A stretch of 63,989 bases of DNA, the filler included, from Hausera hauseri (lineage: Eukaryota), in the NCBI GenBank assembly GCA_046269625.1. It is 12 parts of 12 records of this genome, joined end to end, with 100 filler letters (N's around TTAATTAATTAA, not from the genome) between each part and the next. Parts side by side here need not be neighbours in the genome. Positions count along the whole stretch, not along the records: positions 9,029 to 17,033 come from JBJURY010825416.1; 11 more parts are not named here. The stretch is one strand, 5' to 3'. A program made the position numbers and the translations under genes. This document shows, one piece after another, positions 9,029 through 17,033 of this stretch (position 1 is the first letter of the stretch; every line of letters begins with the position of its first letter). The notes beneath the pieces are model-generated. The model was not told the origin of the DNA, searched no databases, and saw only the letters and a program-made list of their open reading frames with translations.

Positions 9029-10438
9029 CATCACCCAGGTTCCAAGGCTACATTCCGCCTTCTCAAACGTCACGTAACATGGCCATCAATGAGGTCTGAT
9101 GTACAAAACTGGGTTAGGCAATGCATAGCTTGCCAAAAGTTCAAAGTAGCCAAATATCTTAAACCACCATTATTCCATTTCCCATGTACATCCCGTTTTG
9201 AGTCAGTGCATATAGATATCGTTGGCCCATTACCTCCTGATAACGGCCACCAATTCATCTTAACAATGATGGACCGCGCGTCTCGTTGGCCTGAAGCCGT
9301 CCCTTTGCGCTCCATCAATATAGACTCCATTGCCGACGCGTTCATAAAGATCTGGATTAGCCGGTTCGGTTCACCTCGCTACATAATTACGGACCAAGGT
9401 CCTCAATTTGAGTCAAATCTATTCAAATCTTTAGTTAACCGACTGGGCATAAATCACATTCACACAACTCCGTATCATCCCCAGTCGAACGGCTTATTAG
9501 AACGCTTTCATCGCACTCTCAAGATTTCGCTAAAAATCCTGGCCGAAAGTAATAAGAATTGGACAACCATCCTTCCTTTTGTTTTACTCGGGTGGCGCAA
9601 CACGCCGTCTACTACCACCGGTTGCGCACCTGCTGAAGCACTCTTTGGTACTACAATTCGGGCACTTTTTGAGCTCACCGACTTAGATAACACACCAACT
9701 GACGAAACAATCAGATCTGCACAAAATCATTTCGTTCAGATAAGCCAGGATTCTTTCTGTAAAATAGTACATGGAGACAAAACTTACTTACCTGACTCGC
9801 TATTTAACGCAAAATTTGTTTGGCTAAAAAACCCTTCACCTACAGGATTCCAACCAAACTATTTAGGACCATTTAAAGTCCTCAACCTAAGTTCGCACAC
9901 GTTTACCATACTCAAAAACGATAAAGAGCAAAATGTGCACATAAATAACGTAAAACCAGCATTCTTCGTCGATGATACACCGGAATCTTCAGCTGAATCT
10001 ACATAAAACTTTCTTGACTCTTTCAGTTCTTCTCCCATTCTGCCTGCACGACAATCTGCTACTCCAAAACCTGAAACAACTCAAAACATTACACCAAATG
10101 CTATACCGATCAGTTCTTAAGCTACTGACATGTCAGATCAAAGTTTAACTTCCTCCCAAACAACTCAGCAATCAATAAAACAATACAGTAAAGAAATAAG
10201 ACTGTTACCTTCAGCAAATACAGCAGAGAACAGAATGTAGACAAAATTCAACGCCTTGTCCATATGCAATAGCTGACAAAACTTATTCTTTCCACGTTTC
10301 TGATCCAATCACACAAAACTCGCTTTTTTCAATTGTCCGTCTACACCTCACTGCTTTGTCTTCTTGCTCTCGCCCAGACAGTGTCATTTTATAACGGGGG
10401 TAGTGTGGTGCTGCGGGCTTGGGTGCGTCACACCACCA
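9029..10438 (+). mobile_element. CsRn1-like Ty3/Gypsy element, 3' part (copy D)
   Basis: Integrase, S/T/P-rich tail, G-rich PPT (CGGGGGTAG, 10395-10403), then a TG-starting GC-rich terminal segment 10404-10438. Confidence 0.88.
9089..10006 (+). CDS. Gypsy integrase (CxxC of the zinc domain, DDE core, GPY/F motif)
   Basis: CIAC, VHIDIVGPLP, IITDQGPQFES, YHPQSNGLLERFHRTLK, YLGPFKV. Open for 305 aa; the N-terminus is cut by the contig start. Confidence 0.93.
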   Translation: MRSDVQNWVRQCIACQKFKVAKYLKPPLFHFPCTSRFESVHIDIVGPLPPDNGHQFILTMMDRASRWPEAVPLRSINIDSIADAFIKIWISRFGSPRYIITDQGPQFESNLFKSLVNRLGINHIHTTPYHPQSNGLLERFHRTLKISLKILAESNKNWTTILPFVLLGWRNTPSTTTGCAPAEALFGTTIRALFELTDLDNTPTDETIRSAQNHFVQISQDSFCKIVHGDKTYLPDSLFNAKFVWLKNPSPTGFQPNYLGPFKVLNLSSHTFTILKNDKEQNVHINNVKPAFFVDDTPESSAEST

Positions 10439-11897
10439 AGACAACATCTTTCGACCATCCAACAAGTATTGTAAAATATACTATATGAGACGTTTGATAA
10501 TTTTTGCCAAAAGAAGTTTCCATGAAATCTTCTATTTACGGACCAATTAGTTCTTTAGGAATGTTCGTCGTACTGATTAGAAAAATTAATATGGACACAT
10601 CAGCCATTAAAAGTTTGAAAAACAAAATAAAGGAAAATTATAAGAAAAACGACTACTGTTCAGTTATTGGTAAACATGAGTCAAGTTCAAAATGTTAACG
10701 TGTACTAGCTAGTACGAGTTCAGAATCAAACTTTTCAGATGCATTTTTTCCCAAACATAATTAGACAGTCTTTGGTAATGAAACTGTTGTCGAAAATAAA
10801 TATAATAGTACACGTTATGCATACATGCAGACGATTAAACGTTCAATCTATCAATAATCCAGAATACAGAATGTTTTAAATCCGAATCACTCAGAAGAAC
10901 GATTTTTAAATATCAGTAAATAATCCGTTATGCACAAGGCACAGATTTTATCCTTTTGATTAAATGCGAATACAATTTTGAATACAATTCGTCATTTCTG
11001 TTAAAAATTCGAACAAAATATTTTAGATTCTGTTGTAATCAAAATTTCCTTTTGGCCAATGTAATTGTCATTTACCTTTGTTTTATAAACGAATTAGTGC
11101 CGTGATCACGGATTGGGTTGTGCTGCCAATCTGATGCTGTTTTAATAAATAAAATAGATAAGCGTTAACTGATAAAAAAAAGAAGTGTTTGGTGATACTG
11201 TTATAGAATACAATCTTTTGAATTTTAATCAAATGGTTTTGTTTTTTAATATTGACAGTTTGAAGATTATTTATTTGGATCGAAGATGTTATTCAGTGCC
11301 ATTTAATTTGACCCTGAGTGGTCAAAAATGGCACTGAGGTTGGTTATGTTAACCGTAGTCTGGATCATTTAATTGACAAATTTATGTTTGGCCTAACTAT
11401 CCTGACGAAAGAACAATGGTGTCAAAAGCACAGAAAATACTCTACCGCTTTATGCATTTCGTACCGGTTTTGCTATGGGACATTTCAAAACAGTGTAAGG
11501 TTGGTGGTTTGCTCATTCTGTGGTTTGCGGCACTTTTTACGTTTTTATTTCTTTGTTGAATTTAAAATGAAGAATGTTTTAAAAGAAAACATAGAAAACT
11601 TATTTAATCTCATTCTTCATACTTCTCTATTCTTATTAAACAGTCAATTATTGGCACAAAAAACCATTTTATATGCTGTCACTTTTAAAGGTTCAAAACG
11701 GTTGTCCATACTAATAATTTACAATGACATATATTTGTTTAAATTAATCATTAAATTCCAATTGAAACAGTCACTTTTCAAATTCTATTTTTTGAAATTT
11801 AATACGCGTCTATTGTCGTTGAAATATGTTGATGAATTGCACGAAATGTCATTCAACGATGTCGATTACAAAATAGTAGATTTAATTTTATCCACAG

Positions 11898-12105
11898 GTC
11901 AGTTATCGAAAGAATCTAGAAATGATCCAACTTTTCACCAATGTATTTACGAATCAGCTACGTTGCCACTTTGTTGTTTATCGGATAAACCATCGTATTT
12001 ACGTGAGAATTGTAAACGAATTGTTGAAGAAAACTACAAATTAGCATTTGACAATTATTGTACATTTATTCAAACGGCCGAATGTACGAAAGAAATATTT
12101 CGAGA
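11898..12105 (+). pseudogene. Possible UBE2Z-like E2 C-terminal fragment
   Basis: HQCIYESATLPLCCL...KRIVEENYKLAFDNY weakly resembles the UBE2Z C-terminal extension as recalled from memory. Preceded by an acceptor-like ttatccacag. Confidence 0.22.
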
Positions 12106-12109
12106 TTTC

Positions 12110-13870
12110 AAAAAAGTTGTATCCGGCTATCGAATTATAATTGATAATCAAACGATAGCGTTTGAATCAGAAAGGGATCCATCTGTTTTAGTATCCCCAT
12201 CCAGTGGAAAGCTAGTTCAATTTAGTGCTGAAAATGGCGACCATGTATTTGCAAATAGTGTGTATACATTAATGGAAGTTATGAAACTTTCTATGGAATT
12301 TAAAACTGTTGCTTCGGGATGTATTCATTACGTAAAACTACCCGGCGCAATATTGGATGCTGGTCATCAAGTAGGTACATTGACACTTGATGATTCTGGT
12401 CAAATTAAATAGGAACTCATGTCACAAATATCTGGTCGAATACCTACGAATGTCGAACGAAGCATAAAGCAACAGATGCCTGTATATGCAAGCAATGCTG
12501 TTGTCATTTTTCAGGATCCTCTTTATTGTTCTTCGAATATTGACGAGGAACCATTCCACATTATCAATATTGCCTTACGGGAATGTACTATGACATATGA
12601 TGATAACGAAAAAATTTTCGAAGATTTCTGTCAACGAAAGGAAAAGATTCTTAAAGAACGTAGAATTCGTCATGTTACCTTTTTGATTACATCTATGGGT
12701 ACCTTTCCTCGGTAATTTACTTTCCGAGCAAAAAATAATTTCAAAGAGGATACCATTTATTGTCATTTTGAACCAGCGTTAGTTTTCCAACTAGAAATAA
12801 ACAGGATGCGCAATTTCGATTTGGGGCCAATAACAGTTGTAAATTGTCGAATGCATTTATATTTAGCTCACGCAAATGTGTCTGTAGGACAGGAAGTTAC
12901 TGACTATAGATATTTTGTTCGCAGCATAATTAGACATGATGATTTGGTGACGATAGAGGCATCATTTGAGTATGTTGCTAACGAGGCTGAGCGTACCTTT
13001 TTGGAGTCTCTCGATGCTCTGGAACTGGCTATGTCTTATCCAGATGGTCAGAAAACGTGCAATCATGTATTTCTTAATTTTGCTGACCCTAACCTTGCCA
13101 GATCTCGGTAGGTTGGAAAAAACAGTTCGACGAATGGTTATGCAATATGGATCTCGTTTGTGGAAACTAAGAGTTTCACAGGCTGAATTGAAAATGATGG
13201 TCCAATTCAGTGACAACGAACAACGAATACCAATCCGAATGTGGTTGGCTAACGAGAGTGGTTACGACTTAGAAATATCTATTTATAAAGAAGTCCTTGA
13301 TTCGGCAACCGGGCAAATTCAATTTCTATTATTTGAAAACGGAAAACGAGGCAAGCTGCAGTGTTTTATATTGGACACACCATACCAAGCAAAAGATAAT
13401 TTGCAGTTAAAACGACGTCAAGCACTTCAGTTTAACACAACATACGTTTACGATTATTTTAAATTAATTAATCAGGCTCTTGAAGGAATTTGGAAAGCAT
13501 ACAACTCTCAATTCCTAATTGATAATCCAGCCATAGAATTGGTATCAAGTTTGGAGTTGGCTATTGATTCGAGCAACCGTATTCTTCAAGAAATTCAACA
13601 TACTCCAGGATCCAATAAAATTAGCATGGTTGTCTGGCGAGTAAAACTGACGACCCCTGAAATTTATCCAACGGATCGTGAGATCATTTTGATACGTAAT
13701 GATGTCACTGTCAAAATGGGTTCATTTTTCATTGTCGAAGATCAGCTATTTAAGAAAGCGTCCGAACCTTCTCGAAAACTGGGAATTCCCCGCGTATATT
13801 TTGCGTCAAACTGTGGAGCCCGAAGTGGATTAATGAAAGAAATTAAGAATATTTTCATAGTCGTTTGGAA
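12110..13870 (+). pseudogene. ACACA: Acetyl-CoA carboxylase fragment (biotinyl domain, part of central domain, start of carboxyltransferase), internally deleted
   Basis: ERDPSVLVSPSSGKL...MEVMKL (biotin lysine), [68 protein letters not shown]. Stops at 12410 and 12713, frameshift near 13090. Confidence 0.93.
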
Positions 13871-15309
13871 TAATTTTCTCCAGTGCGGATATAGTCATTT
13901 AACCAGACTTCTGAGAACGTTGGCGACAAATGATCCATTTTTCCACACTTCAAAATATATAGAAACTACCCGATTTCATTTGTTTGACACTACAACACAA
14001 TATACATCCGTGTTCCGTGATGATGAAAATCAACTGGTATTAGACAGCACGAGGTACCATCATAGCCTCTCATTTTCATCGTGGTTTGTCATGCATATTC
14101 GGACATTTCTGGCAAGTTTGGCAGCCGATCTCTATGACATTGTTCACAGTAGTGTTTATTACGGTAACATCGGCAATCCGTACACGATTGTAATACCGCA
14201 ACCAGTTTTACTCACTGTCTCCGTTCTTTATAACTATCCTTCCACAATTCATCATAACGAGGACACATTGAACGATAAAATATTGGATATGGTTCTCTAT
14301 CTGATCAATGAGATGTTATTGGAGGATGTTTCCCGATTGGATGGCAATTATCCGTTATTTATTAATACGGCTGGTAATTATAATGATTCGGTAAGTATGG
14401 TTAACCAGTCCAAATTATCCAAAGCCGTTTGCGAAAAAACGATGAGTTCCACCATATGAATCACGGTTAACGAAACACATACTCTGCAGGTATTATGCAT
14501 TCCTATTACAACAGTGCACAAATAGTTCGCAGGTCAACAAACAAACCGCTACTTCGGCATTCGAGACAAATGCAGGGCAAACATGCTTCCATTTACATTG
14601 GACATGATATGTATCCGCGTAAGGAATATGACCTTTTTGGCAATCAATTTAAATTTGGCAGAGACAATTTAAATCGGCACATAATTAGCACATCTCATAC
14701 GTACACTCCAAGATGGCATAGATCGAGTGAAGCGGGCTCAACTATATTTACGAGAAATTATCGATCAAAAACACCATTTATGCTGAATGAGCATTTGTAA
14801 GAAGCAACAAGTAGTAAAGGATATGAAGGTGATTCTTGTCGTATGTTTAATGAAAAAGACTGTGAAACGGGAGATTATCATACTGACATTTGCGAAAATA
14901 TTAATGAAGACGGAAATGAAAGACTATGTAATCATTGTTATTCATTTGGTGCCATTTTTTATAAAATTAATACCTGTGTAAAGTACGTTAATCAACGTAC
15001 GCTTCTTGAAAAATTATTTGAAAGTCGAATTTGTTCGGATTTGTTAGTACCAGAAGATTCAGCTAATTTAAAATGAGAAGAAAATCAAGAACTATGTAGC
15101 GAAGCATATAGATTTTTTTATACATTAAATACGACTACATCTAAAAATTGTTTACCAATTCCAACAAATGATTATTTTTATTCTTATAAAATCTGGCATG
15201 ATCTGACCGGTTGTTGTATAGAAAAAACATGCGCCATGTCAAATTTAAGTGAAAATCACTTTATAAAGACGACAAATTTTTTTCCGAGAAGTCTACTGCT
15301 GAAAATTTT

Positions 15310-15560
15310 TCCAATTTCCTTGAGTCATTTCCTGTAGAGCATCTTGATTAACAATTCAACTGTCTGACAATCTTTTTCATTCCTTTACCATATCCTAATT
15401 TGAAGGAATTACTGGTAACATATGATCATATCAAAGTTTTTTCCGCTGAACACACATCGCTCATTCCAATTATTTTTACATTGGCATTGGCTAACAATAA
15501 GCTTTCCAGAATTCCAAATAAAATATCCAATTTAAGCAAACTAGTCAATATCAACGTAGC
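15310..15560 (+). pseudogene. Leucine-rich repeat fragment
   Basis: PNLKELLVTYDHIKVF, IFTLALANNKLSRIPNKISNLSKLVNINV match LxxLxLxxNxL periodicity. Confidence 0.7.
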
Positions 15561-16581
15561 AATGGCATCGGGAATGCAATCATTGAATCGCACAACAATA
15601 AGCGATTCCACGGACCTATACGTTAGATTCGTTTTTACGTTATGCATTCCATTTCTTATTGATTATTTTAATTTGAATATAAGGTATATTAAGTGGAACG
15701 AACAATTTATCACAGGGTATAGCTACCTGCGTGGCAAAATTGCATATAGTTTTTTACTATTAATTCCTTCTAACACGAAAATAATTGAATACGCCGTACA
15801 AGACATCACCGTATTCATTGTGTTGTTTACTATTTTGCATGCACCTATTTTATTGCTATACTATCAATCCATCTTTTTAATATCGCAAATGTTCCACCTT
15901 TATACATACGAATTAGACAATAATGCAAATTATCTTATGCATACTTTGAGTATCTCCTCAGCATTTTACACTGGACAAACCCTGCTGTGTATCGAAAACA
16001 ATGAACCGTTGGTAAAGTATCTGCTAATCGTTACCATAATCAATACTAACTCAGCTATGTCATTTAACTTTAAAATCGAATATACTATTCATTCGACATA
16101 TCATAGTACATTTACCGAGAATGTTATTTCTGAAAAACGTTCGCCATCTAAAGGAAATATATACATTAAAGGAACTATTTTCAGACGAAATATTCAGCAT
16201 CAGCTAATTATGTATACCTGTGAATATTTATACTATGTCGAAATTGTTAAATTTCTAACTATTTTTGAACATTTTCGATCGAATTTTATAATAGACGAAA
16301 TCAAAACTTCGAAATTGACTATCGAAATAAAACCAATGATCTCGTGCTCTACTGCCGTTCCGATTCCCCTGGTGAGAAAGATAATAGGGACTCTGGGTGC
16401 GACCGTGTCCCCGGCGACGCACTATACCCCTAAAGTGACACATGTATTTTTCTCTATCTGTCTTTTCCAAAACATACATACCCACACACATCACACATAT
16501 ACCAAATCTCAATTAGACTACCCTCAATCAACTATCTCCTCGGCCAGAAAGACAGACCATTATAACTTGAATACTTTGGGC

Positions 16582-17033
16582 ATGTCTATGTCTTACGCAC
16601 CACGTTGCATACACGACTTATCTGATAAATTCGTGCCACTAACACTGCTATTTGAAAACGGACATACCCAAACTTATTACATCTATAAATTTACAACAGT
16701 TGCCAAATTTTCGTGCACACTACAGCTGCAAACATCTTTAGCTAATTTCCGCCTCAGCTTTAACGGACTATTCCTCCAACAATCAGACGTAATAACTGAT
16801 TACACTCATTTATCCTCTACAGCCATACTCACTGTACATTCCCGTCTGTTAGGCGGATCTGATCCCAAAACATCTAAGGAGCAACAAGATTTTACTGACA
16901 TCCCCACCATACATGTCCCACTAAAACAACCTCCTTCAGTCCTACCGACAGCATCTTCTTCGGTCAATTTTCCTTGTGTTGACTATTTCACGGACAAACA
17001 ACACTCCAGTCGTACGTGGCTAGAATTCCATGC
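16582..17033 (+). CDS. Ubiquitin-like domain fused to Gag N-terminus (CsRn1-like copy A, 5' part)
   Basis: Ubl at about 16630-16857 (LTLLFENGHTQTYYI...FRLSFNGLFL...DY...ILTVHSRLLGG). Downstream FPCVDYFTDKQHSSRTWLEFH is homologous to the Gag start of copy B (LHCTEYFIDNEKSSKTWLHFH). Confidence 0.8.

What the first reader, a model, noticed from the sequence alone, without database searches (positions are those of the whole stretch)
11318..17033. Host-gene mosaic kept almost open as one plus-strand frame that runs into Ubl-Gag
Seen: plus-strand ORFs tile 11318-17033 nearly continuously (364, 98, 101, 497, 101, 77 and 561 aa), and several are separated only by single stops. They stitch together junk-like AT-rich sequence, a possible E2 piece, deleted ACC, an orphan segment, Cys-rich pieces and LRRs. 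The last ORF reads through the LTR-like end at 16421 in frame into Ubl-Gag. Hundreds of stop-free codons in non-coding-looking AT-rich DNA (11318-11900, 15560-16580) are unexpected. Copy B is also preceded by co-oriented UFL1/RECQL5 pieces, and copy C is followed by a co-oriented fragment. Inference: Ubl cleavage would let Gag-Pol be made from any upstream in-frame fusion, so these elements could tolerate or accumulate translated cargo. Alternative: a uni-strand piRNA-cluster-like graveyard, which explains the orientation but not the open frames.
Basis: partly seen in the sequence, partly recalled or inferred. Interest (0 to 1): 0.8.

Follow-up and report, generated by a model that had tools for sequence, protein, structure and literature searches.

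The report
Host-cDNA mosaic fused to Ubl-Gag retroelement
A 5-kb patchwork of intron-less pieces of at least four host genes sits head-on against a retrotransposon copy whose Gag is preceded by a ubiquitin-like domain; its reading frames stay far more open than chance allows, so it is most likely a young, decaying product of reverse-transcriptase template switching, and only perhaps translated "cargo".

Summary
The ORF tiling is real but uses three frames, not one. Block I (11318-14456) has 2 stops and 1 frame shift, block II (14471-15334) has 2 stops, and block III (15352-17032) is unbroken into Gag. No dinucleotide shuffle reaches these open runs.

The content is a cDNA-like mosaic:
- COG8 from its own start codon (11846).
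- An internally deleted acetyl-CoA carboxylase (ACC) piece that replaces the middle of COG8.
- COG8 again.
- A Cys-rich stretch with a faint SZT2 match.
- Weak LRR and Na+/H+-exchanger pieces.
- An unrecognisable 540-nt segment, S2.
- A short leader, then a ubiquitin-like domain ending LLGG, then Gag.

No E2 piece was found. Six of eight homology-defined junctions are in frame.

Two segments are stop-free without explanation: 11318-11845 (upstream of the COG8 ATG) and S2. They have no relatives and no coding-like codon usage (P about 3e-5 and 3e-6).

Differences from another run's contigs fall evenly on codon positions, which indicates neutral decay.

Best reading: retroelement-mediated chimeric retroposition, a known kind, joined in frame to an unusual leader-Ubl-Gag ORF. 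Other family copies, LTR positions and RNA data could not be obtained.

The parts
9029..10006 (+). 3' end of the pol gene of an upstream retroelement copy (integrase zinc-binding and core domains), cut by the piece's edge
   Evidence: Pfam Integrase_H2C2 1.4e-13 and rve 2.9e-12. Its codon usage cross-validates with the Ubl-Gag part.
10007..11292 (.). Non-coding spacer between the integrase and the mosaic. It shares no LTR with the downstream element. AATAAA lies at 11144 and an A8 run at 11174-11181.
   Evidence: 22-28 stops in every plus frame. No significant similarity to 15858-16640. Homopolymer and signal scan.
11293..11337 (.). 45-nt near-perfect palindrome at the 5' edge of the open block; part of a more highly repeated stretch
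   Evidence: Self reverse-complement alignment. Depth is 122 in 11298-11495 against 12-30 in the mosaic, and run X1 shows an opposite-strand joint 11335/11499.
11318..11845 (+). 'unk1': 176 stop-free codons of AT-rich sequence directly upstream of, and in frame with, the genuine COG8 start codon; no relatives
   Evidence: 0/14/14 stops in the three frames, P about 3e-5. No hits. Codon usage is not best in the open frame.
11846..12109 (+). COG8 (Dor1) N-terminus, from its own Met
   Evidence: P0013 residues 1-88 align at 65% identity starting at its Met1. Pfam Dor1 positions 4-58.
12107..12403 (+). ACC piece a: biotin-carrier domain (human ACC1 residues 727-825), joined in frame to COG8
   Evidence: PDB phmmer 1.5e-24. 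Pfam Biotin_lipoyl 7.8e-10.
12416..12691 (+). ACC pieces b1 and b2: human residues 902-944, then 1282-1332. Both internal deletions (826-901 and 945-1281) keep the frame. A stop sits at the first junction (12410-12412).
   Evidence: Two colinear stretches in PDB phmmer.
12716..13875 (+). ACC pieces c and d: human residues 1356-1740 (end of the central domain and start of the carboxyltransferase). The match is contiguous and uninterrupted. A stop at 12713-12715 and a small frame-shifting indel near 13085-13100 lie inside the homology.
   Evidence: PDB phmmer 5e-46 and 3e-67. Sequence read.
13875..14456 (+). COG8 middle part (Dor1 positions 198-287, 13875-14141), joined in frame to ACC, then 105 further open codons without a match
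   Evidence: Pfam Dor1 1.2e-10. Zero-stop P 0.003 for 14142-14456.
14471..15334 (+). Block II: an orphan piece (14471-14797) and two Cys-rich pieces (14801-15073, 15077-15334). The first Cys-rich piece has strong coding periodicity and a faint SZT2 match.
   Evidence: Frame map. SZT2 residues 1938-1991, E 0.18. GC at codon positions 1/2/3 is 0.42/0.35/0.14. Codon test. X1 contigs read a sense codon at the 14798-14800 stop.
15352..15857 (+). Start of block III: degenerate LRR piece (about 15394-15555) and the C-terminal transmembrane part of a Na+/H+ exchanger (about 15622-15850), in frame with each other
   Evidence: LRR_8 E 0.0014 and Na_H_Exchanger positions 300-367, E 7.7e-5, both below Pfam cut-offs. 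The Atlas's best named hits are Na+/H+ exchangers at 0.88.
15858..16397 (+). 'S2': 180 stop-free codons with no relatives and no coding-like codon usage. It is shared by a multi-copy set in run X1 whose upstream sequence differs before 15858.
   Evidence: 0/16/12 stops, P about 3e-6. No hits. Codon tests. X1 record 6 (depth 66) matches from 15858 on. X1 record 7 bridges 16398 with no differences.
16398..16581 (+). Leader in front of the first Met of Ubl-Gag. More-divergent copies lose alignment upstream of 16394-16398. It is open and in frame, but not significantly so on its own.
   Evidence: Loose ends in X1 and X2 at 16394/16398. P 0.09. It scores best in frame with the retroelement codon model.
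16582..16857 (+). Met (16582/16588) and ubiquitin-like domain (about 16633-16857) ending ...SRLLGG (GG = 16852-16857)
   Evidence: The top two PDB hits are ISG15 Ubl domains, end to end, E 0.4-0.7. All named Atlas hits are in the ubiquitin clan, 0.90-0.92. SRLLGG is invariant with P0012. The AlphaFold model was unusable.
16858..17033 (+). N-terminal part of Gag, cut by the edge of the piece; a very high-copy sequence
   Evidence: Aligns to P0012 with conserved F.C.D.F.D.Q.S.RTWL.FH. Summed contig depth is about 16,000 against 12-30 for the mosaic.

Best explanation
The stretch is a young, now neutrally decaying chimeric retrocopy. A retroelement reverse transcriptase copied pieces of several host mRNAs by repeated template switching: COG8, acetyl-CoA carboxylase (ACC), a Cys-rich (possibly SZT2-like) gene, an LRR protein and a Na+/H+ exchanger. 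The enzyme most likely belongs to the integrase-bearing family seen on both sides. The product is joined head-on to the 5' part of a copy that encodes leader-Ubl-Gag.

The COG8-ACC-COG8 interleaving, with two further skips inside ACC, is the signature of copy-choice between two templates.

Much of the open frame is a legacy of coding cDNA of recent origin joined mostly in frame. The 1.2 kb next to Gag (15352-16581) forms an unbroken in-frame leader of the element's own ORF.

Shown: the pieces, their order, the frames, the excess of openness and the neutral substitution pattern. Inferred: the RNA origin, the enzyme, and the age.
For: - About 1.77 kb of ACC coding sequence (12107-13875) matches the human protein colinearly with no intron-like interruption, apart from two in-frame internal deletions.
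- COG8 starts at its own Met and is split by the ACC piece, with both junctions in frame.
- Six of eight homology-defined junctions are in frame (P 0.02).
- The stop at 12713 and the shift near 13090 lie inside contiguous homology, so they are later lesions. X1 contigs read a sense codon at the 14798 stop.
- The 38 listed differences from X1 fall 11:15:12 on codon positions, with 11 synonymous and 27 non-synonymous, which is neutral.
- There is no poly(A) at the 3' end of the mosaic.
- Retroelement coding sequence lies on both sides and shares codon usage.
- Chimeras of two or more genes made by LTR elements, including a Pao element, are documented in animals (PMC5131818).
Against: - The order here is pol end, then mosaic, then leader-Gag. 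That is the reverse of the published internal-replacement chimeras (5' part, retrocopy, 3' part). No LTR, PBS or PPT could be placed, so it is unknown whether the mosaic lies inside an element.
- Two long stop-free segments are not explained by a coding legacy. These are 11318-11845, upstream of a genuine start codon, and S2. They have no relatives and no coding-like codon usage.
- The excess of in-frame junctions is not predicted by random template switching.
- The parental genes were not available, so intron loss and microhomology at switch points are untested.
Confidence: 0.55

Rival explanations
1. Translated cargo. The mosaic, or at least its proximal part, lies in the transcribed leader of an element. 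It is translated as an N-terminal fusion and removed by host deubiquitinases cutting after the LLGG of the Ubl. Only openness is then selected, not the amino-acid sequence. Old cargo would therefore become junk-like yet stay stop-free, and new cargo could accrete at the 5' side.
For: - Stop-free stretches have no relatives and no coding-like codon usage: 11318-11845 (P 3e-5) and S2 (P 3e-6).
- Block III has 560 codons and no lesion. Blocks I-II carry 5 observed lesions, or 9 if they were once continuous with it (P 0.22 to 0.02).
- The proximal host pieces (LRR, Na+/H+ exchanger) are degenerate and lack the codon-position GC gradient that the ACC pieces show, yet they are open.
- The S2-leader junction is multi-copy in X1.
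- Depth rises stepwise toward Gag.
- The relative P0012 has about 100 residues before its Ubl.
- A 429-nt (143-codon) in-frame variant without the Ubl exists in X2.
- Junctions are in frame more often than chance.
Against: - There are no RNA, ribosome or protein data.
- The three blocks are not continuous.
- Substitutions in blocks I-II are neutral.
- The leader holds about as many out-of-frame as in-frame ATGs: 8 against 7.
- A filter cannot easily create 176-180 open codons from non-coding DNA unless selection was long-lasting.
- The Ubl assignment is weak (E 0.4; the model failed), and cleavage is only inferred.
- Ordinary LTR transcripts start in the 5' LTR, and it is unknown whether the cargo lies downstream of it.
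Confidence: 0.25
2. A uni-strand piRNA-cluster-like graveyard: fragments accumulate in one orientation in a transposon trap and are kept as a small-RNA source.
For: All pieces are co-oriented and lie between two retroelement fragments of the same orientation.
Against: - The fragments are host coding cDNA, not nested transposon debris.
- The interleaving of COG8, ACC and COG8 with in-frame joins, and the stop-free frames, are not expected in such a graveyard.
- No small-RNA data are available.
Confidence: 0.05
3. DNA-level gene-fragment capture by a Helitron-like or other DNA transposon, with the palindrome at 11293-11337 as a terminal hairpin.
For: A 45-nt palindrome with raised copy number sits at the exact 5' edge of the open block. 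Helitrons are known to stack co-oriented fragments of several genes (PMC4224331, listed).
Against: - The ACC piece is uninterrupted coding sequence, with deletions that keep the frame.
- COG8 is split by ACC and resumes in frame.
- No Helitron termini or Rep/helicase were seen.
Confidence: 0.05
4. A chimeric host gene that is, or recently was, functional. Its protein sequence mattered, and it happens to abut a retroelement.
For: Long open frames and in-frame joins. Some LTR-mediated retrocopies are under constraint (PMC5131818).
Against: - Codon positions are hit evenly, with 27 of 38 differences non-synonymous.
- ACC lacks its biotin carboxylase domain and most of its carboxyltransferase.
- There are several stops and shifts.
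Confidence: 0.05
5. An assembly artefact: a contig stitched from unrelated reads.
For: The X1 and X2 contigs are short, and most junctions could not be shown to be bridged.
Against: - Every bin of the stretch is covered in X1.
- X1 record 7 bridges 16398 with no differences.
- X2 contig 9 (11874-12129) reaches about 20 nt past the COG8-ACC joint, short of the 31 nt on each side needed to count as a bridge.
- In-frame joins and shared frames are not what misassembly gives.
Confidence: 0.03

Closest known systems
LTR-retrotransposon-mediated retroposition with multiple template switches (Tan et al. 2016, Genome Res, PMC5131818; e.g. the two-gene chimera made by the Pao element BATUMI in Drosophila)
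   Same: Partial, intron-less, sense-oriented host gene fragments from more than one gene. Retroelement sequence lies on both sides. There is no poly(A) tail. The ORFs stay in frame with the parental proteins while young, and the chimeras can be re-copied.
   Different: The order here is pol end, mosaic, leader-Gag, rather than 5' part, retrocopy, 3' part inside one element. At least four or five genes and about ten joins are involved. The join into the element's ORF is in frame. There are long stop-free segments with no coding signal. Microsimilarity at the joins could not be tested.
Retroviral transduction of host cDNA as Gag fusions, and the maize Bs1 element (cited in PMC5131818)
   Same: Host cDNA pieces, with deletions, are fused in frame to gag by copy-choice recombination.
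   Different: In those cases the cargo lies downstream of gag and replaces element genes, and the frame is kept because the fusion protein is selected. Here the cargo is upstream of gag, and its sequence evolves neutrally.
Ubiquitin-fusion processing: host ubiquitin-ribosomal protein fusions and polyubiquitin, and cytopathic pestiviruses with ubiquitin inserts (from general knowledge, not tested here)
   Same: A ubiquitin fold ending in GG sits directly in front of the functional protein. That would let host deubiquitinases free the downstream protein whatever lies upstream.
   Different: The Ubl here is highly diverged (no Pfam hit). It sits in front of a retrotransposon Gag. Cleavage is not shown.
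5' transduction or exon trapping by non-LTR elements (e.g. SVA with MAST2 exon; from general knowledge)
   Same: Host exons stack at the 5' side of a retroelement, with a copy-number gradient toward the element.
   Different: That mechanism needs target-primed reverse transcription of a read-through, spliced transcript. This family has an integrase. The COG8-ACC-COG8 interleaving cannot come from splicing of one transcript.

Membership tests
LTR-mediated chimeric retrocopy (PMC5131818) | Host fragments are intron-less copies of mRNA | tested here: inconclusive
   ACC homology is contiguous over 12716-13875 and, with two in-frame skips, from 12107. COG8 starts at its own Met. The parental genes of this species could not be fetched, so intron loss is inferred, not shown.
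LTR-mediated chimeric retrocopy (PMC5131818) | Retrocopy replaces an internal part of one element and is flanked by its 5' and 3' parts and both LTRs | tested here: not met
   Integrase lies upstream and leader-Ubl-Gag downstream, which is the reverse order. No repeat is shared between 10007-11317 and 15858-16640. The piece may hold two elements or a tandem; LTRs could not be placed.
LTR-mediated chimeric retrocopy (PMC5131818) | Microsimilarity at switch points | not testable with these tools
LTR-mediated chimeric retrocopy (PMC5131818) | No L1 hallmarks (poly(A) tail at the 3' end) | tested here: met
   The only A/T run of 8 or more in the piece is at 11174-11181, upstream of the mosaic.
LTR-mediated chimeric retrocopy (PMC5131818) | Can combine two or more parental genes | tested here: met
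   COG8 and ACC are firm. Na+/H+ exchanger, LRR and SZT2-like are weak.
Ubiquitin-like domain | Beta-grasp fold of about 75 residues ending in a di-glycine | tested here: inconclusive
   There is no Pfam hit. The top two PDB hits are ISG15 Ubl domains, end to end, at E 0.4-0.7. All named Atlas hits are in the ubiquitin clan at 0.90-0.92. LLGG is conserved with P0012. The AlphaFold model has pLDDT 33.
Uni-strand piRNA cluster | Dense nested transposon fragments in one orientation that give rise to piRNAs | tested here: not met
   11846-15850 is host coding sequence, not transposon debris. Small RNAs are not testable, because no RNA run is on record.
Helitron with captured gene fragments | 5' TC and 3' CTRR ends with a sub-terminal hairpin; captured fragments keep their introns | tested here: inconclusive
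   A palindrome at 11293-11337 begins with TC. No 3' end was identified, and the ACC piece has no intron-like interruptions.

The most novel reading that the evidence does not exclude
An integrase-bearing retroelement family puts a deubiquitinase-cleavable Ubl in front of Gag. Any in-frame upstream sequence can then be translated and clipped off. Host cDNA pieces added to the leader by template switching are kept only if open. They then drift into junk-like but stop-free sequence, which makes the leader a growing record of captured host genes.
Probability: 0.22. Interest if true: 0.85.

Novelty: new variant of a known kind. Interest (0 to 1): 0.58.

Why it matters
The ordinary reading would make this one of the most complex retroelement-made gene chimeras described in an animal: about ten joins and at least four or five genes. 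It also shows copy-choice between two host mRNAs. The less ordinary reading would reveal a new translational strategy for retroelements. A Ubl 'cleavage cassette' would make Gag-Pol expression independent of what lies upstream. That would explain how such elements can carry and shuffle host coding sequence, and it would give a natural example of selection on openness alone. The leader-Ubl-Gag architecture is itself rare: only one distant relative was found among 1.8 billion representative proteins.

Tried and rejected
- E2 piece: no UBC-type hit anywhere. The stretch is COG8.
- Shared LTR between 10007-11317 and 15858-16640: none by repeat search, blastn with word size 7, or Smith-Waterman against shuffles.
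- Tandem repeats as the cause of openness: none.
- tRNA or Rfam features: none.
- Genes on the minus strand: no family hits.
- Relatives of S2 and of 11318-11845: none in the word-indexed protein search. The Atlas recognised only the Na+/H+ exchanger part.
- Close relatives of the 500-aa ACC/COG8 ORF: only ordinary ACC fragments at 55% identity or less, so no annotated copy of the mosaic exists in the collection.
- Exact look-up of the window ORFs: not in the collection.
- Ubl-Gag relatives: one (P0012) in the exhaustive search. None in JGI metagenome contigs by protein pattern or DNA pattern.
- AlphaFold model of Ubl-Gag: pLDDT 33, unusable, so no fold search was run. A profile search of the PDB gave nothing.
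- PBS-like reading of TGG at 16395: rejected by eye, because it does not fit tRNA 3' end invariants.
- Short intron models across the block I/II gap: considered by hand and dropped as unsupported.
Other genomic copies, the contig of P0012 and earlier notes could therefore not be consulted.
- No RNA runs are on record for the stretch.

Full report
**Scope.** Only places 9029-17033 are genome; everything outside is N or linker. All work was done inside that range. Breaks are described but not mended.

**1. The observation**

A six-frame stop map shows three blocks on the plus strand.
- Block I: frame 2 is open over 11318-12409, 12413-12712 and 12716-13108, separated by single stops. Frame 0 is open over 12957-14456. 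The two open windows overlap, as expected for one small indel.
- Block II: frame 2 is open over 14471-14797, 14801-15073 and 15077-15334, again separated by single stops.
- Block III: frame 1 is open from 15352 to the edge of the piece (560 codons, no lesion).

So there are three frames, not one. At the I/II and II/III borders the open windows do not overlap, so continuity there would need at least two lesions each.

The minus strand has nothing longer than 102 codons (99 within the finding's range).

Openness is far beyond chance. None of 1000 dinucleotide-preserving shuffles reaches the observed runs, and the open frame has 0 stops where the other two plus frames have 14-39. The adjoining spacer 10007-11317 has 22-28 stops in every frame.

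**2. What the pieces are**

- 9029-10006 is the integrase end of a retroelement pol.
- 11846-12109 is the N-terminus of COG8. A 211-aa COG8 fragment of a relative (P0013) aligns at 65% identity from its own Met1 to residue 177 of the window ORF, so 11846 is a genuine start codon.
- At about 12107 the sequence passes, in frame, into acetyl-CoA carboxylase (ACC). The human ACC1 residues matched are 727-825, then 902-944, then 1282-1332, then 1356-1740. The two internal deletions keep the frame.
- At 13875 the sequence returns, in frame, to COG8 at Dor1 profile position 198. ACC therefore replaces the middle of a COG8 cDNA.
- ACC lacks its biotin carboxylase domain and most of its carboxyltransferase, so it cannot be an enzyme.
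- Block II has no firm relatives. 14801-15073 has strong coding periodicity (GC at codon positions 1/2/3 of 0.42/0.35/0.14) and a faint match to SZT2 (E 0.18).
- Block III begins with a weak LRR match (E 0.0014) and the last transmembrane part of a Na+/H+ exchanger (E 7.7e-5, below Pfam's cut-off; the Atlas's best named hits agree at 0.88).
- Then comes S2 (15858-16397), with no relatives.
- A 184-nt leader follows, then Met at 16582/16588.
- Next is a ubiquitin-like domain of about 75 residues ending SRLLGG (GG at 16852-16857), and then the N-terminus of Gag.
- No E2 piece was found.

**3. The Ubl-Gag**

Pfam sees no ubiquitin domain, and an AlphaFold model from a two-sequence alignment was unusable (pLDDT 33). 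Three weaker lines support a Ubl:
- The two best PDB matches for the 82-residue stretch are ISG15 Ubl domains aligned end to end, with LRLRGG over SRLLGG (E 0.4-0.7).
- All named language-model neighbours are in the ubiquitin clan (0.90-0.92, recognition 3102).
- The LLGG and the following Gag motif are invariant in the only relative found among 1.8 billion representative proteins, P0012 (33% identity).

P0012 has about 100 residues in front of its Ubl, so the Ubl is internal there too. I take the Ubl as likely. Cleavage after GG is inference from how ubiquitin fusions are processed in general.

**4. Other copies**

Two public runs hold parts of the stretch as short contigs. No RNA run is on record.
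- In X1 every bin is covered, but at the listed differing places all of its contigs read another letter than the window. X1 therefore holds related copies, not this exact one. The longer listed pieces over the mosaic (X1 records 1-5) differ at about 2-5% of places.
- Summed contig depth rises toward Gag: 12-46 over 11694-14465, then 25-276 over 15060-16247, then about 500-670 over 16248-16643, then about 5,000 and 16,000 over the Ubl and Gag. The tool warns that summed depth is no copy number, so this is only a hint of a nested family.
- A depth-66 contig matches from 15858 onward and has 1.1 kb of different sequence upstream.
- A contig of the same depth bridges 16398 without a single difference. 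The S2-leader-Ubl arrangement is therefore probably repeated in X1.
- More divergent copies lose alignment upstream of 16394-16398.
- In X2 one contig joins 16467 to 16897. It skips 429 nt (143 codons, in frame), which removes the Ubl.
- The 38 listed differences that fall within the open frames hit codon positions 11:15:12, with 11 synonymous and 27 non-synonymous. This is a neutral pattern.
- At the in-frame stop 14798-14800 the X1 contigs read a sense codon.
- The stop at 12713-12715 and the shift near 13085-13100 lie inside otherwise contiguous ACC homology.

Taken together, these lesions arose after the mosaic was made.

**5. What is and is not explained by a coding legacy**

Six of eight homology-defined junctions are in frame (P 0.02), including all four inside block I (P 0.012).

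Two long segments remain stop-free without explanation:
- 11318-11845: 176 codons upstream of a real start codon, with stops 0/14/14 across the three frames, P about 3e-5.
- S2: 180 codons, with stops 0/16/12, P about 3e-6.

I ran a simple codon-usage likelihood test. It was trained on the homology-supported host pieces (leave-one-out) or on the retroelement pieces.
- It puts the true frame first for 7 of 8 known host pieces, and for integrase and Ubl-Gag in cross-validation.
- It does not put the open frame first for 11318-11500, 11501-11845, 14471-14797 or S2.

The test is weak, because the training set is small and it is dominated by amino-acid composition. It does suggest that these segments are not ordinary coding sequence.

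The leader 16399-16581 is not significantly stop-free on its own (P 0.09), but it scores best in frame with the retroelement model.

Block III has no lesion. From the lesion density of blocks I-II one would expect 1.5 to 3.7 lesions there, depending on how lesions are counted (P 0.22 to 0.02).

**6. Mechanism**

COG8-ACC-COG8 interleaving, skips inside ACC, a genuine 5' end of COG8, uninterrupted coding sequence and no poly(A) tail together fit copy-choice reverse transcription between co-packaged RNAs. This is the process described for LTR elements in flies, mosquito, fish, chicken and mouse, including a two-gene chimera made by a Pao element (PMC5131818). That paper also notes that young copies keep ORFs in frame with the parents and can be re-copied.

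I therefore file the origin of the mosaic under that known process (confidence 0.55), with these reservations:
- The order here (pol end, mosaic, leader-Gag) is the reverse of an internal replacement.
- No LTR is shared between 10007-11317 and 15858-16640.
- No PBS or PPT could be placed.
- The parental genes were not available.

**7.

The idea that the Ubl lets Gag-Pol be made from any upstream in-frame fusion is not shown.

It gains some support from the unexplained stop-free segments, the lesion-free in-frame leader made of degenerate host pieces plus S2, the repeated S2-leader junction, the leader of P0012, and the excess of in-frame joins.

Against it:
- The blocks are discontinuous.
- Evolution in blocks I-II is neutral.
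- The leader holds about as many out-of-frame as in-frame ATGs (8 against 7).
- There are no expression data of any kind.
- A filter cannot create 180 open codons from non-coding DNA unless selection on openness was long-lasting.

I put it at about 0.25 for the proximal leader and lower for the whole 5.7 kb.

The piRNA-cluster reading (0.05) does not fit the content. DNA-level capture (0.05) is suggested only by a 45-nt palindrome at 11293-11337. Misassembly (0.03) is unlikely given the frames and the bridged junction.

**8. Limits**

The protein collections hold no copy of the mosaic, and metagenome scans found no relatives. The decisive comparison across family copies could therefore not be made.

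**Verdict.** The anomaly is real and statistically strong. Its origin is most likely a known process in an unusually elaborate form. It is attached to a rare leader-Ubl-Gag architecture, and whether that architecture tolerates translated cargo remains an open and testable question.

Noticed in passing
window 11293-11337: A 45-nt near-perfect palindrome (TCAGTGCCATT...AATGGCACTGA) sits at the 5' edge of the open block. The surrounding 11298-11495 has about five-fold higher contig depth than the mosaic, and run X1 shows an opposite-strand joint 11335/11499. It may be a small foldback or MITE-like repeat, or a transposon terminus.
   Followed up: partly
window 16467-16897: In run X2 one contig joins 16467 to 16897. 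It skips exactly 429 nt (143 codons, in frame), which removes the rest of the leader and the whole Ubl. Ubl-less variants of the family therefore seem to exist, and the Ubl may itself be an in-frame acquisition.
   Followed up: no
window 10007-10660: The stretch after the integrase stop keeps the C-rich, G-poor composition of the retroelement. It scores best with the retroelement codon model in the integrase frame, although it now has many stops. It may be a decayed C-terminal extension of pol or the element's 3' region.
   Followed up: partly
window 11144-11181: AATAAA at 11144 is followed by the only A8 run of the piece, at 11174-11181. This could be the 3' end of some other retro-copied sequence upstream of the mosaic.
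   Followed up: no
P0012 (ENA metagenome assembly, contig 8454 bp): This is the only detectable relative of the Ubl-Gag. It is 515 aa, with a leader of about 100 aa, a Ubl ending SRLLGG, a Gag with a weak DUF7041 match, and two C..YH..F....A.KC knuckle-like motifs. Its contig could not be fetched.
   Followed up: partly
window 9029-10003 and 16582-17032: Integrase and Ubl-Gag predict each other's reading frame by codon usage, so the two flanking retroelement fragments probably belong to the same or a related family. Even so, no LTR-like repeat is shared within the piece.
   Followed up: partly
window 15603-15837: An X2 contig of 566 nt matches only 15603-15837 (7% different) and has unlike sequence on both sides. 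It may be an exon of the parental Na+/H+ exchanger gene, or another mosaic with different neighbours.
   Followed up: no
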